64,000 nucleotides of DNA from Saccostrea cucullata (GCF_032062105.1 NW_026929278.1:186001-250000); one strand, 5' to 3'. Positions 1,961-10,109 are shown, counted from the stretch's first letter. Made by a program: numbers and translations. Notes: generated by a model from the sequence alone, not told the origin.

Positions 1961-3559
1961 TTTTATGGAAAGTGTCTTCCTTATAAATAAAACTATAAGT
2001 ATAAGTTGCATGGATTACCACTTGTAGAATCAAACCTATATTCTTCTAAAATACAACACATATTATGCGACTTACACACGAACACTATTGTCACCTGTTT
2101 TGTAAGCAGGGATCAGTACGTATTGATCATGTAATCTAATTCTTGTTGCACTTCTGGATTATTGAATACAATTGGTTAAATATTTCATATTGCTCCGCAA
2201 TCGTTTAATACACTTTGAAACATGGATTTAATACATGTAATCAATTTTGACAAAGTGTTGAGGTCTTATTTGTCATTTCTGGCTCATCGTCCGATATTAA
2301 TGAAATATTGATGCCAGTTAAAGGATCGGGGTTCCCTATATTCATTTTTTTTTCAAAGGTAATCAAAGGTCCTTATTAATATCTATATATATGTCACCTG
2401 TAATATCCTGAACAGCAGGACTATAGTGCTAGGGTGAAGAAAGACATGAACACAATGGAGGATTATTTTTCAGATATTCGATATCCAGGCTATGTAAAGT
2501 TTTTTTTGTGATTAAAACGTTTGGAAGCAATTGTCGATTAATATAAATAAAAATATAAGATTTTGTAGTCTGTGTAGAATTTAACTTGATGCACTTGGGA
2601 TACAAGATTGAATTCCTTTGTGATGAGGAATATTACTTATATTAAAAGCATCAATTCCTTTGTTGGTAATTAATGTATAAGGAAGAGACGGATTGTTAAA
2701 CTTGCATATTCTTCAGTAAAGCACGGAGTTTAAAAAGCTTATGATTTGCAACATTCTTAATCACAGATCTTAGTCTATAATCTAGTGTCGAGCTTTCCTT
2801 GACCTTTTCAAAAAGACTATTTAGAAGTTTCAACGGAGCAGAGTAAAGTGTGGTGCAAATATGATGTAGACCAAACTGTTGGTTTTAAAAGATGGAAATA
2901 AATCAAAAGAGACATTGTGTAATAAAGAGATATGTAAGAGTAGATATTACAGTTTAAGAATTAGAGCATTTTTGATGATCAGTATAATTCACTTATTACA
3001 CATGTATTTCATTGATTGCAGTGCACCTTAAATAACATGGTACAATTTTCTTTTTAGATTCACGGCGGCCTTCAGCGAGTAAGTATAAAGACACGATACA
3101 GTTTGTAATATAGTCTCAATATTTGGATACATTACAGAATACGCTAATGAGCATTTATAATAAAAGAAAATGATATTTCGAGGAAAATGATTTAAAACTG
3201 ATTGATGGTTATAGATGTTGATAGTCATTCATTAAAAAAATTCTATTGCAACATCTATAATTACAGATCTTATTCTATAATCTAGCGTCGAGTTTTCCTT
3301 GACCTTCTTAAAAAGATTATTTAAAGGCTTCACAAAGACAGAATAAAATCCCTCGTTAAAAACGACCAGTTGCCGACGGTTTTTGAAGCAAGAATTGGAT
3401 TCTTCGGGTGACAGACGGCAGTTCATCGGCCGTTGTCTTGCCCGATTTCGACCTTTTTTTCGTCGGTCGACCAATTTTACGTCCATTCCCTAACAAAAAA
3501 AAATACTATAGTAAACTATAATTAACTATAGTTAACTATAGTTTACTATAGTACCAAAG

Positions 3560-4110
3560 AAAAAAACTTTGGAACTTTGATTTACTTTGGCGAAAACTTT
3601 GGAACTTTGATTTACTATGGCGAAAACTTTGGAACTTTGATTTACTATGGTAATAACTTTGGAACATTGATTTACTATGGCGAAAACTTTGGAACTTTGA
3701 TCAACTTTGTCGAACACTTTGGAACTTTGATTTACTATAGTAATAACTTTCGAACTTTGATTTACGATGGCGAAAACTATGGAACTTTGATTAACTTTAT
3801 CGAAAACTTTGGAACTTTGATTTACTTTGGCGAAAACTTTGGAACTTTGATTTACTATGGCGAACACTTTGGAACTTTGATTTACTATGATAAAAAACTT
3901 TGGAACTTTGATTTACTATGGCAAAAACTTTGGAACTTTGATTTACTATAGTAAAAACTTTGGAACTTTGATTTACTATGGTGAAAATTTTGGAACTTTG
4001 ATTTACTATGGCGAAAAATTTGGAACTTTGATTTACTATAGTAAAAACTTTGGAACTTTGATTCACTATAGTTAAAACTTTGGAACTTTTATTTACCATA
4101 GTTAAAATGT
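3560..4110. repeat. 30-bp tandem minisatellite (~18 units, GGAACTTTGATTTACTATGGCGAAAACTTT)
   Basis: Direct 30-bp periodicity. Preceded by CCCTAACAAAAA...ACTATAGT short repeats from 3488. Confidence 0.95.
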
Positions 4111-5121
4111 GAAACAACTTGAGTAAAAACTCCAGACTTCCCTTATCATATACAAGTGATGCAAACAGTTTATGTTAAAAATTTTTCATTGTAACATAGA
4201 TTACACTTGAAAATAAATAGTAACAATAAATTTTAAAATGAAATACAAAAATACATCTATGTCTTCTCTTCATTGTTTTAAACAAAGCATGATTTTAATT
4301 TTGTTTAAAACGGTATTTAAAACAGGTATACATACATCTGTACAATATATGAATAGATTCTTTAATATTTTGGTCGTTAATATGAATGTTTAGATTTTTC
4401 CTATGAAACTATGTAGAGTAATGAGCTTTCATTTATCACAATTAATGTTTCCTGTATTTTTCTATACACGAAAGTTCATTTTGACAAATAAGACACAGTC
4501 AGGATACAACCTATCATTTCAAATTATAAGTAAAAAATATTATAGTAAGACATGAAGATAAAGCAATGGAATGAAGATTAAAAAATAAATTCTATAAAAC
4601 ACATATACTTGAATTTTTCATCCTGAGGAAAATACTATAAACTTCATAAGAATGAAAACAGAAAAATACTCAACAAAAAGAATTAACACGACTTTGCATC
4701 AATCTATAAAAACACATATACACTTTGAAATATATAACAACGAATATTCTTTAATACAGCTTCTAAGAATAAATTAGGACAATTAAATTAAATGAAACAG
4801 ACAAAAATGATATTGCGTTATCTGGCATTCAATGCCTTAAATAAACAAATAAGTTGCTAAATATAATACAATACGTAAACTAGTAAAAGAAAAAAAAACA
4901 GCACTACAAAACTACTCACTCTATATATACATATAAAAACACATGCAATATAAAAACTGAAAGTCAAGAAACTTAATTGGCACTATTTAAATACACAATA
5001 CATACATGTACTGGTACGTCAAAAAATAAAAATAATTTTAAATGTCCTTTTCCTGGTATTTATAATAATTTAATAATCACAGTCGAAAATCACAAGGTTG
5101 AGCAATGGTTGTGAAAACAAC

Positions 5122-7205
5122 TCATGGATCCTCTGGTGTGGGGACTTTCCTGGCCTTCTTATGGATGCTGTTGAGCTTCGTCCGCACTGTCTTCTTGATT
5201 TCTTCAGCCGACACTTGCCATTGGGTCCTGGTGTAAGCTAGAAAGTAAATGACATACATATTTATTTATAATGATATTAAACGATTTTCTCTAGGGCAGT
5301 AATATTTGAGACTGTGTCATGTTCAATGAATTTAAAATTTCATTCATTCTTTACTTTTTACATCATTTAAGAAGAGCTCATCTTCTAATACTCTTGTATA
5401 AGCCTTGGTTATAAGAAATACCCTTTTAATATGACACCAAAATTAGGCAGCTTAAGTACTGTAAACCCTATTTCTTTGAAGGAATGAACATTTACAGTAA
5501 ATATTTAAAAGAATTGGTTAAGAAATAGCTTACAAATGATGTCTGCTAATTTCTCAGCATCCAGCGCTGGTTTGATGTCCTCGGTTTTTGTCCTTCCCTT
5601 TGAACCGGTCAGGCTACATTCTGCCATTTCCTCCTTTGTAAAGATCTCCTCCATTATGAAGTTCACAAGATGGCTGTATCTGGAGCCTACATTGCTCTTT
5701 AGCTTTTTGGCTGAGATGCAGGCACTGCCAAACTGTATCACCTGATAAAAATAATTACCTTTTTAATTACAAAATTCATTTTGTTCCATTGATGAAGGCG
5801 AAATTTCTTACAGGTGCAAGATGATTTATGGTTTTGAAGAATATTCACATTAAAAATGCTAAAAGTTGGTATTCAATGAAAATTATAATATTTGTGAGTT
5901 AATAGAGTTTACTATTCTATAATAAATTCTAAGATAAATTACTATTTCAATAGTATAAATTTTACATGAAACCATGCACTATTTTGAGAAATCACCTAGC
6001 ACAATTACAGCTGTAACTGTCCTAAGAGGTACATATTTCTGATCCAATCTCAATAAAATCATACTTCTTACATCAAACTATTTATTAAAAATTTTCACAT
6101 CTTTTTGCCAGTGTGCAAGTTGATTTTTTCTTAAAACAAAATAGACTAAACTGTGAATTAATATAAACTTAAAAACTTTTCCAATAACATTACCTCTTCC
6201 CCATTTTCATTTTCTGGAGCCACAGGTGTGATGGCCTGTAAAGGGGCTCTTCTAATTCCCTGTGTTGGGGAGACAGGCTTCGGTGTTGACAACACAGCAG
6301 AAGGCTTGGTGCTTGGAGACGGTGTAGGGGAACTCTTCAGTCTCCTTACTTTCTGCAGAAGGTCTGGAAGTTCTAAAAAAAAAAATAAGATATTCATTAA
6401 AGATTTCAGCTGAATTGGAATGTCACTTTTTTTTCAAATGTTGTCAGAAAATATGGTATCATTCTGGCAGATCAATGTTCAGAATTATGTGGTTTATCTT
6501 ATACCACCCTATGTGCATCCCCACAATTGAATACTTTGTTAAAACTTGAAATGTTGCATCATTTGTATAAAAAAATCACATGAAATTACATCCCAGAATT
6601 CGGTAAAATTCTGCTTACCCAGGAACACAAATCTGTCATTAAGTATTCCAACAGAGTTACATGTGCGAAATCATGATTCTTTTGAAATTTTACGAAACTT
6701 TATATATATTTTAGAATCATGTAGAATTATCTCATAGAGCTGATGAATGAAAGTTTCTAAGAAAAAACTCACTGGCAATTTAAAATCATGATTCATTTCA
6801 ATGGACCAATGTTTTTCTTCTCATTCTAGTAACTTGATAAAAAAAATGTAGTAATTATGTATTATGATGTAAGGGCTTTTCAAGTAAAAATTATGTGGAG
6901 GGTATGAAACAACTATCAAAATTTATGCTGTGTGTGTGCTTAAGGCCATCCCCTCTCCCTCCCCCTCTTAAGAAAATAGCTCAGGAATAACTATAACTTT
7001 AAATTGACAACCTACCTTTAGCAAGTCCCAGAGCGGCACGTAAATTTTCATTTTCCTGGGACAATCGTCTTATCTCCTTTGATCTCTTTTGAAGTTCGAA
7101 CGCTTGCATCTGACATTTGGTCATCAGCTCTTCTTTCGAAAGTCGAAGATCTTCTTCATCATCGGATGAAACAACCTCCTCTAAATTTCTCAACCAGGAT
7201 GATTT
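5122..7205 (-). CDS. Spliced coiled-coil + BEN-domain protein (BEND5/BEND6/Insensitive-like architecture), 5' exon not found
   Basis: Exons 7205-7016, 6372-6194, 5741-5534 and 5237-5122, with GT-AG introns of phases 1,0,1, join into 230 aa with no stops. Order: acidic patch, coiled coil (LQKRSKEIRRLSQENENLRAAL), S/P-rich linker, then BEN motifs EEIFTKEEMAECSLTG...KPALDAEKLADIISY...EEIKKTVRTKLN. Confidence 0.85.
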
Positions 7206-7829
7206 CTAAAAAAAGCAAGTTGTCAATTAGCAAAATAAAGCAAACAAAAACAATAATACTCACTAGTAATACCCCTGCTCTGATACACTATCATTCTAAT
7301 ATGTTAAGTTCAATCACGGCAGACAGTTCAATAGGTACTTGACATCAGATTCATGCAAAAATAAAAAATGCAAAGTTGCTGAGAAAACTGCTACAAACAT
7401 TTGTTATGTATGGTATGAACAGATGCAAAGACCAACACAAAGTTGACATGGAATACCAGGGGTGTGCAATTGCAAAAATTAGTTACTAGCTCATTGGGCT
7501 ACAGCCCTGGTTGCCAGTCACAAGCCCATAAGCTACCGAAAACAATATATGTTTAACATAAAGGTAAAAAAAAAAAAACAAGAGGCTCACAGGCCTTATA
7601 TTTCACCTGAGTATTGTGTAACAACTTTTTAACAATTAACTCGGTTCGTGTTTTACACTAGAGGCCAGGAAATTCACAATTCACAATTCTGAAAGAGGCA
7701 CCATTGATCATCATAATTATAAACTTAGCATGCTTACCCTTTTTACTTAATACCCAGAGGTAGATCAGAGTAACTAAGAGAAAATGCAGTTCCACTTTAT
7801 ACCCAGTTGTGCACCTCACCCCAAGTTAT

Positions 7830-8152
7830 AATTATATCCCCGCTCCGAAGGACTGGGGCGTATACTGGTTTATCCTTGTGTGTCTGTCCCTCCGTCTTTC
7901 TGTCCGTAACTTTGCAGTTTTCTCATCAACTACTCATCGAAGATGCTTGACATTTTAACATAATCTTCTTTGAGGCATGCCATACGGTGGGATATATTTT
8001 TGTTCAAATCCGATATCAACTTCTTGTTTGTCTGTGCGTCTGTCCATTTGCCTGTAATTGAACTTGTGAAAATTAACATCATAAAATGATAAGGTTTTTG
8101 ACATCAGGGAGGGGGTATTACTAGCATGAATTTGCTCACATATTTCTTGTTT
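7830..8152 (+). mobile_element. Short non-autonomous Helentron/HINE-like element
   Basis: TTATATCCCCGCTCCGAAGG...GGGGCGTATA start, followed by a GTCT/GTCC-rich microsatellite; ends GCTCAC...TTCTTGTTT. Confidence 0.5.
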
Positions 8153-10109
8153 TGTCTACGTTGGTGACCGATTTCTTCAGTTAAAGTTGTTCGTCGACCA
8201 ACCTTCGATCATCATCCGGCCATCGGCGGTCAGTTTATTAAGTCAGTCGTCCGTCGTTCGACAATATAGGTGTCCAAAATTACGTCCGACAGTTAAAATC
8301 AAACAGTAGCTGAATGCTCGATGATCAGGCGACGATTGACCGACTTGTGATTATTTAACCTATAAAGGATACATAACACAAACAACATGTCAATGCATGG
8401 ATCGGTATATACTTTTTGAACGAAAATAACATAAATTATTATTCTATTAGACATAAGGAAATCTTAAACATCCCTTGCTACTAAAATATGCTTTTTTGCA
8501 ATTTTAAAGAGAATTTTGAACATATTTATAACATTGAGTGAGAATTGTACCACTTTTCTTTGCAAACCTATCTGAATATGGATCACCTATCTGAATATAG
8601 ATCTACGAAAAATATCGCTTATTTCTAAAGAAAAAAAAAACGACTTTGCTGTGTTCTTTATCCAAGTCATCAGTGTTCCTAGGGAAAATGTGACTGCTCC
8701 GTTCCGGCCAATCAAGTTCATGCAGCCGACAATACCAGAAAAATTTGGCCGCCCGATCATCGGCTTAATTGTGACCTAGGCATAAAGTGTGGTGCAAAAA
8801 TGATGTAGACCAAACTGTTGATTTCAAAAGATGGAATTATTCAATTTTTATTACTCATTTTTTTTATTGATTGCAGTGCAGCTCAAAGAACAGTTAAAAA
8901 GTACAATTTTTGCTTTTTAGATTTACGGCGGCATTCAGCAAGTAAGTATAAAGGCACGATACAGTTTGCAATACAGTCTCTATATTTGGATATTTTACTG
9001 AATATTTACGCTAATGAGCATTTATAATTTATAATGAGCATTTATAATATGAGTGTATGTATTTTTTGTATCTGATAAAATATAACTATTTGTGTTTTGT
9101 ATCTGTTGAAAACTTGCATATTTATAAAATGAAACATGAATTTTATAAAAATAATAGTTTGGTATATTTCGTCAATTTTTGTCAGTAATTATCAATGTTG
9201 TCCACGAACTTTACTGACAACCCTCGTATATAACCTAAAGTTTCATTTTCTTAACGTTCAATTTTATTAGATTAATAAAGATAACTTACACAAATATATT
9301 GGATTATTGTTTCCAAATTCCAGAGCCTGGTGATCCACCGTGTAAGTATAATTTTATATTGCTTTAATCGTTTTTTAATTAGCTTTATGAAAAGTAAATA
9401 TTTCGTAAAATGTTTTTCTTGAATTGCCTGTTGTATTTTTTTTTACACAATTCATTCCCGGAAAAAAATAGATTAAATTATCCCCCCCCAAAAAAAACCC
9501 AACACATAACTGGACATATTTTTGTTTGCGTATATAATTGTTTATCAGAAGGTTTGACAAAAACTCTTGATATATTGATAAAATGGATGTTTTCATTTCG
9601 TACAGATGGAAGTAATTAGAAAAAAAATCCTTCTCTTAGTCATTAACTGATTGAATTTATATGTATAACTTGCAGCATGTTAAGGTTTCCACAAATTTTG
9701 AACGTGTTCAAAACATAATATTACAGTGCAAGGTCGATTTTGATTTTTATTTGTACTGTATATAATTTAGTACGATCAATAAATATAAAGAGCTATCTTA
9801 AATATATAAAAACCAATATATTCTCAGGGTCTTATTGATACATTAGAATGCATTAAGAATATTCTACCTTTTCAATATCAGTGGTACGTTATGGCGTCTT
9901 AGAAGACGAGATGACGTCAACTTTAGAACACATAAAGTTTTATGGATATTGGTATTTAGAGATGTTTATTTATTTTGTTTCGCCATATCTCTCCTTTAAA
10001 TTTAAATCTGCAAGAGATGACGTCTTACATAAGAGGCTTCAACAGGTACATGTAACTTTGGAATTAGTCAAATTGTCGAAAGAGAACATGTCAATGAACT
10101 CTCCTTACA

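What the first reader, a model, noticed from the sequence alone, without database searches (positions are those of the whole stretch)
3348..8782. Intact, spliced BEN-domain gene carried inside a discrete 5.4-kb insertion
Seen: a ~500-bp tandem duplicate provides an internal empty-site control. Copy 1 reads GCAGAGTAAAGTGTGGTGC; copy 2 reads ACAGAATAAA[5.4 kb]TAAAGTGTGGTGC. The insert holds four in-frame exons (230 aa: acidic patch, coiled coil, S/P linker, BEN domain) and no transposase. Established: BEN domains are sequence-specific DNA-binding/chromatin modules and also occur in transposons and viruses. Inference: this is a non-autonomous element that moves a repressor-like BEN gene. Its product may bind the element's own 30-bp array or CpG-rich ends, either as an accessory transposition factor or as a mobile regulator. 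The gene stays intact while surrounding repeats decay. Alternatively the gene belongs to a nested CCCT-terminated element starting at 3488.
Basis: partly seen in the sequence, partly recalled or inferred. Interest (0 to 1): 0.78.

Follow-up and report, generated by a model that had tools for sequence, protein, structure and literature searches.

The report
BEN gene fragment inside nested MITEs
The 5.4-kb insert is a common miniature transposon of the hooded oyster that later received a DNA copy of the last four exons of a host BEN-domain regulator gene plus another repeat, so the gene is a captured partial duplicate, not the cargo of a gene-moving element.

Summary
A 500-bp tandem duplicate gives an empty site, and a 5,436-bp insert (3347-8782) sits between TAA duplications. 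It contains a 30-bp array and four clean minus-strand exons with a true BEN domain, and no transposase.

The main interpretation does not hold. The insert's two ends are the arms of an ordinary ~810-bp Harbinger/Tourist-type MITE (>500 copies, TWA duplications), and no other copy carries the gene. Two things are nested inside it.
- **Unit 3488-7824 (4.3 kb):** it starts at the terminal inverted repeat of a second high-copy MITE family (TIR plus 30-bp array). It continues through the gene's 3' flank and exons D-A, and ends inside another repeat at a 4-bp microhomology.
- **Repeat 7832-8149 (0.3 kb).**

The unit is a 93-95% DNA copy of the 3' half of a multi-exon oyster gene on contig C2472 (RefSeq 'eIF5B-like'). 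That gene's ~200 N-terminal codons lie outside the copied stretch, and a Crassostrea homologue has the same N-terminus.

The window gene is therefore 5'-truncated. Its exons still show constraint (dN/dS 0.2), while the C2472 copy carries a stop in its BEN exon. Older fragments share the same TIR-side boundary, which suggests MITE-anchored partial duplication. Expression could not be tested.

The parts
2700..3110 (+). Copy 1 of the host tandem duplicate. It holds the paralogous empty site, with a single TAA at about 2834-2836.
3344..3346 (.). Left target-site duplication, TAA
3347..3486 (+). Left arm of the outer Harbinger/Tourist-type MITE. Its terminal repeat is degenerate here, about 7 nt shorter than in the family.
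3488..3562 (+). Terminal inverted repeat of a second MITE family (begins CCCTAAC, then an A run and palindromic 10-bp units). This is the left boundary of the nested 4.3-kb unit.
3563..4096 (+). 30-bp tandem array, 17.8 units. It is the body of the second MITE family.
4097..5121 (-). Low-copy 3' flank of the BEN gene, colinear with C2472, C3438 and C20607
5122..5237 (-). Exon D: end of the BEN domain and the TGA stop
5534..5741 (-). Exon C: first two thirds of the BEN domain
6194..6372 (-). Exon B: Ser/Pro-rich linker
7016..7205 (-). Exon A: acidic patch and coiled coil. It begins at an AG acceptor with no start codon; the first in-frame ATG is at 7124-7122.
7563..7824 (.). Part of a ~250-bp very high-copy repeat that lies in the parent gene's intron. 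The right boundary of the copied unit lies inside it.
7821..7831 (+). Surviving 11-nt core of the outer MITE (CCAAGTTATAA). Its first 4 nt overlap the end of the copied unit, giving a microhomology junction.
7832..8149 (.). Second nested insertion: a high-copy repeat whose family members carry ~135-nt tandem units
8150..8782 (+). Right arm of the outer MITE, ending in GTGACCTAGGCA
8783..8785 (.). Right target-site duplication, TAA
8786..8990 (+). Continuation of copy 2 of the host tandem duplicate

Best explanation
This is a nested composite in Saccostrea cucullata, in a stretch whose tandem units look like the intron and micro-exon units of a host gene.

**Order of events.** First, an ~810-bp Harbinger/Tourist-type MITE inserted at a TAA in copy 2 of an old tandem duplicate. 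Later its middle received two insertions:
- a 4.3-kb DNA-level partial duplicate of a host 'BEN-solo'-type gene;
- a 0.3-kb repeat.

**The duplicate.** It runs from the terminal inverted repeat of a second MITE family (TIR plus 30-bp array), which lies in the 3' flank of the parent-type gene on contig C2472. It continues through exons D, C, B and A with their introns and ends inside an intronic repeat. There it is joined to the outer MITE by a 4-bp microhomology.

**What the window gene is.** It has the coiled coil, the linker and a complete BEN domain, but lacks the ~200 N-terminal codons and the original start. It has nevertheless been under purifying selection.

**Inferred mechanism.** A resident copy of the array MITE at this site was repaired or extended using the homologous array beside the parent gene as an ectopic template. 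Synthesis ran off into the gene and was end-joined. This would be a one-TIR-anchored form of gene-fragment capture, and it seems to have happened several times.

**Shown versus inferred.** The structure is shown. The mechanism and any present function are inferred.
For: **Outer MITE**
- Both arms are contiguous in other copies, separated only by a 15-nt core (51 junctions aligned).
- There are more than 500 candidate copies of each arm.
- 31 of 41 full copies have identical 3-bp flanks, and 27 of those are TAA or TTA.

**Nested unit**
- Window 3497-7824 matches C2472:75640-84082 at 93-97%. Neither the MITE arms nor the host flanks match there.
- The junction sequences show the shared CCCT start and the shared end ...CCCCAA.

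**The TIR belongs to another MITE family**
- There are at least 1384 candidates at up to 96% identity. Full copies have the form TIR-array-inverted TIR and are 0.3-1 kb long.

**The copy is partial**
- P0002 is the C2472 gene model. Its residues 1-163 map to C2472:69120-73919, outside the shared unit.
- Crassostrea virginica LOC111116397 aligns continuously across the N-terminus, exon A and exon B.
- A Crassostrea-like contig has exons A, B and C in the same order.

**Constraint**
- Exons are 96-98.6% identical against about 93% overall. There are 11 synonymous and 8 non-synonymous differences. dN/dS is 0.205, Fisher P=0.0008.

**Recurrence and the anchored end**
- C3438 reaches exon D and C20607 reaches exon C. 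Both start at the same TIR terminus and have unrelated flanks.

**Hybrid origin**
- The window's TIR plus first array units are 91-96% identical to at least 39 other MITE copies, but only 84-92% identical to C2472.
- The last array units and the unique DNA are 93-97% identical to C2472.
Against: - The direction of copying and the repair mechanism are inferred from boundaries alone. Array misregister or later gene conversion could produce the identity gradient.
- A distant paralogue on C9090 also has an exact TIR about 1.8 kb downstream of its BEN exon in the same orientation. That is unexpected for neutral, old flanking DNA and fits a long-kept gene-plus-TIR unit.
- The C2472 'parent' carries a TAA stop in exon C, so it is not a clean functional parent in this assembly.
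- No RNA run was listed, so expression and the real 5' end of the window gene are unknown.
- Constraint on the window branch alone rests on few polarised changes: 3 synonymous and 3 non-synonymous in exons C-D.
Confidence: 0.7

Rival explanations
1. The 4.3-kb unit is a truncated copy of a genuine DNA transposon. That transposon's end would be the CCCTAAC-type TIR, and it would carry the BEN gene as an accessory DNA-binding factor. The TIR-array-TIR MITEs would be its deletion derivatives, and the 30-bp array would be the protein's binding site.
For: - Five loci keep the same geometry, with the BEN exon about 2 kb from an inward-facing TIR. One of them is a paralogue only 48-56% identical in protein, on C9090, with chance about 0.002.
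- The TIR-side boundary is identical in copies with unrelated flanks.
- An earlier scan note reports a Tc1-like element in this genome that always carries a BEN partner (s1-729454, not tested here).
Against: - None of the loci held shows a second TIR or a transposase.
- Only about 9 loci match the BEN exon genome-wide, most of them strongly diverged.
- The gene has at least 9 exons over about 13 kb, and its structure is conserved in Crassostrea.
- The full-length paralogue C7341 shows no exact TIR hit, though the test has low power.
- The right ends of the copies differ.
Confidence: 0.15
2. One reading: the whole 5.4 kb is one non-autonomous element that mobilises an intact BEN gene between its CpG-rich ends.
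For: The insert has a clean TAA duplication and family-wide shared ends. The gene fragment lies physically between those ends.
Against: - All 51 contiguous junctions aligned and all 41 full copies typed (657-1027 bp) come from copies without the gene.
- The unique gene DNA occurs only once more, on C2472, and there it lacks the MITE arms.
- The window copy's left terminal repeat is degenerate.
- The gene is 5'-truncated.
Confidence: 0.03
3. This is a plain ectopic insertion, either filler DNA or a small segmental duplication joined by end-joining, that happened to land in a MITE. The coincidence of its left boundary with a MITE terminus would be chance or reflect a fragile site, with no role for transposon machinery.
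For: There is a 4-bp microhomology at the right junction and a small loss of target bases. The right boundary is not a repeat terminus, since the 250-bp family continues past it in other copies.
Against: The left boundary falls on the exact TIR terminus in four loci with unrelated flanks. The window's TIR and array resemble other MITE copies more than they resemble the sister locus.
Confidence: 0.1

Closest known systems
Tourist-like MITEs of the PIF/Harbinger superfamily
   Same: The outer shell is about 0.8 kb and non-coding. It has hundreds of copies, imperfect terminal inverted repeats and 3-bp TWA target duplications. Harbinger-type DDE_Tnp_4 transposase ORFs are abundant in this genome.
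   Different: No autonomous partner with matching ends was identified. The window copy has a damaged left end and two nested insertions.
Transduplication or Pack-type capture of host gene fragments by DNA transposons (Pack-MULEs in plants; Turmoil-1 in C. elegans, PMC2572040, which states it was then unknown in animals)
   Same: An intron-containing fragment of a host gene lies inside transposon DNA, and a parental locus exists elsewhere.
   Different: The fragment is bounded by only one TIR of the capturing family. The composite has not amplified. Copies form a nested set with one fixed end and variable other ends, which suggests run-off copying rather than capture between two TIRs.
BEN-solo transcription factors (Insensitive, Elba1/2, BEND5/6; PMC4281564)
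   Same: There is a single C-terminal BEN domain preceded by a coiled coil. The best solved relatives are the BEND6 BEN domain (7yul, E=2e-6) and fly Insv (4ix7, E=0.02).
   Different: Sequence relatives were found only in oysters. The window copy lacks the N-terminal ~200 residues. DNA binding was not tested.
Two-gene Tc1-like transposon with a BEND3-like partner in the same genome (scan note s1-729454)
   Same: A BEN-domain gene is physically associated with transposon DNA in S. cucullata.
   Different: There is no transposase here. The BEN type and exon structure differ. The MITE family involved makes 2-bp A/T-rich duplications (TA in about a quarter of ends), not strict TA. No sequence link was found.

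Membership tests
PIF/Harbinger-type (Tourist-like) MITE, for the outer shell | 3-bp TWA target-site duplication | tested here: met
   The window has TAA on both sides and once at the empty site. Of 41 full copies, 31 have identical 3-bp flanks, 27 of them TAA or TTA.
PIF/Harbinger-type (Tourist-like) MITE, for the outer shell | Terminal inverted repeats, small size, no coding capacity, high copy number | tested here: met
   The family ends are imperfectly inverted, at about 12 of 16 positions. Copies are 657-1027 bp, mostly about 0.8 kb. There are at least 529-567 candidates per arm.
PIF/Harbinger-type (Tourist-like) MITE, for the outer shell | An autonomous partner with matching ends that encodes a DDE_Tnp_4 transposase | tested here: inconclusive
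   There are at least 2345 candidate transposase loci, and all 150 scored exceed the cut-off.
BEN domain (PF10523) | Profile match above the curated cut-off | tested here: met
   Exon C alone scores 30.6 bits against a cut-off of 23.2. RefSeq model P0001 scores 37 bits over profile positions 1-75 of 76.
BEN-solo transcription factor | A single BEN domain at the C-terminus with an upstream coiled coil, and sequence-specific DNA binding | tested here: inconclusive
   The architecture fits. DNA binding cannot be tested with these tools.
Pack-type transduplicating element | A host fragment enclosed by both TIRs of one element, with the composite itself transposed to several sites | tested here: not met
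   The unit has one TIR of the array MITE only. The composite within the outer MITE is single-copy.
Pack-type transduplicating element | An identifiable parental gene elsewhere, with introns retained | tested here: met
   C2472 carries the full gene, and the copy is colinear through introns at 93-97%.
Autonomous or gene-carrying DNA transposon | A transposase ORF and two matching ends | tested here: not met
   No transposase domain was found in the ten longest ORFs scanned in the insert or in the ORFs tested on C2472 and C3438. No second TIR was found in the loci held.
Processed retrocopy | Loss of introns and a poly(A) tail | tested here: not met
   All three introns are retained with GT-AG boundaries and match C2472.

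The most novel reading that the evidence does not exclude
The BEN gene and the CCCTAAC-type TIR plus 30-bp array may form a long-lived functional unit. In this reading a small family of BEN-solo genes is spread, whole or in part, from one fixed transposon end. Its protein recognises the 30-bp array of a MITE family with more than 1,000 copies. That would make it a transposon-linked DNA-binding factor without a transposase of its own.
Probability: 0.12. Interest if true: 0.7.

Novelty: new member of a known kind. Interest (0 to 1): 0.36.

Why it matters
The finding corrects an attractive but wrong picture of a MITE that ferries an intact regulator gene. In its place it documents a concrete animal case of a host gene fragment, introns included, copied into transposon DNA. 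The parent locus is identified and both junctions are resolved to the base.

Gene-fragment capture by cut-and-paste transposons is well known in plants but rarely described in animals (PMC2572040). Three features would be worth following up in oysters, whose genomes are rich in MITEs and in presence/absence variation:
- the nested set of copies sharing one TIR boundary;
- the signs of purifying selection on a 5'-truncated BEN gene;
- the complementary damage in the two loci, where one lacks the N-terminus and the other has a stop in the BEN domain.

The linkage seen on C9090 keeps open a more interesting relation between this BEN family and the array MITEs.

Tried and rejected
- **RNA evidence:** The look-up of sequencing runs listed no run. 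Splice junctions and the transcription start are untested.
- **Joined gene model:** the four-exon model was not built or searched. Exons were searched one by one by reference, and only database proteins returned by the tools (P0001, P0002, P0014) were used whole.
- **More genome DNA:** C9090, C7341, C12895, C13035 and full array-MITE copies could be located but not read.
- **The look-up of encoding contigs:** it had no record for P0001, P0002, P0010 or P0014. P0006 gave one 2.6-kb Crassostrea-like contig.
- **piggyBac idea for the CCCT-type end:** rejected. Only 33 ends are preceded by TTAA, and flanks are just A/T-rich. Four of five paired ends show a 2-bp duplication.
- **Helitron idea (TC...CTAG ends):** rejected by the family ends and the TWA duplications.
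- **SINE-terminus idea for the right boundary at 7824:** rejected, because the repeat family continues past that point in other copies.
- **Rfam:** nothing meaningful in 3300-8800.
- **Large protein search with exon C:** only three clusters, all oyster-like.
- **Word searches:** P0002 found one Crassostrea protein and P0001 found only itself.
Full report
**Organism and locus.** The database proteins that match the window's exons are RefSeq models of the hooded oyster Saccostrea cucullata. P0001 is XP_062618666.1 (LOC134280279, 175 aa), the model at this locus. P0002 is XP_062585374.1 ('eIF5B-like', 379 aa), on the 169,820-bp contig that the genome search calls C2472. The assembly is 1.17 Gb in 23,869 contigs.

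**Check of the observation.** The tandem duplicate is real. Positions 2746-2847 and 3246-3347 align at 80% identity with 500-bp spacing, and the second copy resumes at 8783. Copy 1 has one TAA where copy 2 has TAA, then the insert, then TAA. The insert is therefore 3347-8782 (5,436 bp) with a 3-bp duplication.

The 30-bp array at 3563-4096 has 17.8 units at 87% matches. On the minus strand, four exons (7205-7016, 6372-6194, 5741-5534, 5237-5122) have AG/GT boundaries and one frame ending in TGA.

Exon C alone passes Pfam's BEN cut-off (30.6 bits, E=3.8e-7). In P0001 the match covers the whole domain, and the nearest solved domains are BEND6 and fly Insensitive. The ten longest other ORFs scanned in the insert have no significant family match, so no transposase domain was found. 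I searched the exons separately by reference and did not build or search the joined four-exon model.

**The ends belong to an ordinary MITE.**
- Each terminus has more than 500 candidate matches in the genome.
- In other copies (51 contiguous junctions aligned), window 3358-3486 is followed after a 15-nt core by window 8150-8783, giving elements of about 0.8 kb.
- The family starts AACCCCAGTCAC... and ends ...GTGACCTAGGCA, an imperfect inverted repeat.
- Of 41 full copies, 31 have identical 3-bp flanks, 27 of them TAA or TTA.

This is the signature of PIF/Harbinger-type (Tourist-like) MITEs. Harbinger-type transposase ORFs are very numerous in the genome, though I could not link one to these ends. 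The window copy's left end is about 7 nt shorter and altered.

**What fills the MITE.** The MITE's 15-nt core survives in part at 7821-7831, so there are two separate insertions.

Piece B (7832-8149) is a high-copy repeat whose family members carry ~135-nt tandem units.

Piece A (3488-7824) has one close relative. C2472:75640-84082 matches window 3497-7824 colinearly at 93-97%, apart from two extra insertions on C2472 (about 3.3 kb and about 0.9 kb). Neither the MITE arms nor the host flanks match there.

At the left, both copies begin with the same CCCT(A/T)AC-A-run-TACTATAG sequence next to unrelated flanks. At the right, both share ...CACCTCACCCCAA and then diverge. The last four bases, CCAA, are also the bases of the MITE core at that point, so the right junction is a 4-bp microhomology with loss of three or four target bases.

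The 250-bp repeat at 7563-7824 has thousands of copies. In other copies it continues beyond the equivalent of 7824, so that boundary is not a repeat terminus.

**The left boundary is a transposon end.** Window 3487-3700 has at least 1384 candidate matches, the best 39 other copies at 91-96% identity and all starting at the first or second base. Several places show the first ~66 nt again in inverted orientation after the array, giving elements of 0.3-1 kb of the form TIR-array-TIR. The 30-bp array is therefore the body of a second MITE family.

Its ends are not preceded by TTAA (33 such cases only). The flanks are A/T-rich, and four of five paired ends show a 2-bp duplication. I leave its superfamily open. 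In the window, C2472, C3438 and C20607 only one TIR is present, and the array runs straight into the gene's 3' flank at the same junction. The flanks beyond the TIR are unrelated in all four loci.

**The gene is a partial duplicate.** P0002 has about 200 residues before exon A. They map to C2472:69120-73919, outside the shared unit.

Crassostrea virginica LOC111116397 (P0014) aligns continuously over that N-terminal region, exon A and exon B at 49% identity. A Crassostrea-like contig has exons A, B and the BEN exon in the same order. The ancestral gene therefore has an acidic N-terminal region, a coiled coil, a linker and a C-terminal BEN domain, like BEN-solo factors (PMC4281564).

The window has only exons A-D. 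Exon A starts at an acceptor without an ATG. RefSeq's model for the locus omits exon A and starts at an ATG in the preceding intron.

Genome-wide, the BEN exon has only nine matches. A search with the whole of P0002 shows one other full-length paralogue (C7341) and several loci with only the 3' exons.

**Selection.** Between the window and C2472 the exons differ at 19 sites, 11 synonymous and 8 non-synonymous. dS is 0.075, dN is 0.015 and dN/dS is 0.205, with Fisher P=0.0008. One of the non-synonymous changes is a TAA stop in exon C of C2472.

Using C20607 and C3438 as outgroups for exons C and D, the window branch has 3 synonymous and 3 non-synonymous changes. The C2472 branch has 3 synonymous and 2 non-synonymous changes, including the stop. 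This suggests constraint on both branches, but the numbers are small.

Neither locus now encodes the full ancestral protein. One lacks the N-terminus and the other has a truncated BEN domain.

**Mechanism (inferred).** The copies form a nested set with one fixed end at the TIR and variable other ends: C3438 reaches exon D, C20607 reaches exon C, and the window reaches exon A plus part of the upstream intron.

The window's TIR and first array units are closer to many other MITE copies (91-96%) than to C2472 (84-92%). The last array units and the unique DNA are 93-97% identical to C2472.

The simplest account has three steps:
- A normal array MITE sat at this site.
- A break there was repaired using the homologous array next to the parent gene as an ectopic template.
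- Synthesis ran off into the gene and was joined back by microhomology.

This resembles models proposed for transposon gene capture (transduplication), which is common in plants and rarely reported in animals (PMC2572040). It differs from Pack-type elements in having one TIR and no amplification of the composite. Array misalignment or later conversion could mimic the identity gradient.

**An unresolved point.** The distant paralogue on C9090 has exon C at 83312-83551 on the plus strand. It also has an exact TIR at 85354-85382 on the minus strand, the same geometry as here. Only about 260 exact-pattern TIR ends exist in 1.17 Gb, and its 3' flank has no DNA similarity to the window's.

This keeps alive the rival reading that the gene and the TIR/array are a long-kept unit. 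An earlier scan note reports a Tc1-like element with an obligatory BEN partner in this genome. I did not test that claim and found no sequence link to it. I could not read the C9090 DNA.

**Limits.** No RNA run was listed, so expression, the 5' end and splicing are untested, and read laying was not used. Relatives outside oysters were not found by sequence, but with a 69-residue query that says little.

**Verdict.** What is there is an ordinary MITE with nested insertions, one of them a 5'-truncated, still-constrained duplicate of a host BEN gene anchored on the end of another MITE.

Noticed in passing
window:1656-1971: There is a second 30-bp tandem array of 10.6 units. Its unit shares the AAAACTTTGA-type motif with the array at 3563-4096 but has no CCCTAAC-type end nearby. 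It may be a related MITE remnant.
   Followed up: partly
window:3055-3090, 8925-8950, 9320-9350, 13187-14960: The duplicated host DNA contains very short candidate exons with AG...GTAAGT boundaries. Further ~1-kb tandem units lie downstream. The insert seems to lie in an intron of a plus-strand host gene built of repeated micro-exon units.
   Followed up: no
G000:C9090:82315-85382: A distant BEN paralogue (exons B and C) has an exact array-MITE TIR about 1.8 kb downstream, facing the gene, with the same geometry as the window. Chance is about 0.002. The DNA could not be read.
   Followed up: partly
L062 (C2472:81979-82182): The sister, full-length gene copy has a TAA stop in the BEN exon (codon 57 of exon C). 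RefSeq's 379-aa 'eIF5B-like' model ends there.
   Followed up: yes
L078:2443-10177 (C3438:102443-110177): A ~7.7-kb insertion in the older C3438 copy encodes reverse transcriptase, RNase H and tyrosine-recombinase fragments, which suggests a DIRS-like retroelement.
   Followed up: partly
G000:C4427:3276-3923, C264:5622-5935, C15839:3793-3873, C22238:10613-10681: Separate contigs hold 79-91% copies of only the N-terminal exons of the C2472 gene. The 5' half has therefore also been copied, or diverged haplotigs exist.
   Followed up: no
window:7563-7824: This is a member of a ~250-bp repeat family with at least 3700 candidate copies at about 90% identity. It contains a GGTTCG B-box-like motif, but it gave no Rfam match and was not classified.
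   Followed up: partly
L077:1569-2015 (C2472:87568-88014): An ORF with an integrase H2C2 zinc-binding domain lies just outside the C2472 unit and is probably part of an LTR retroelement.
   Followed up: no
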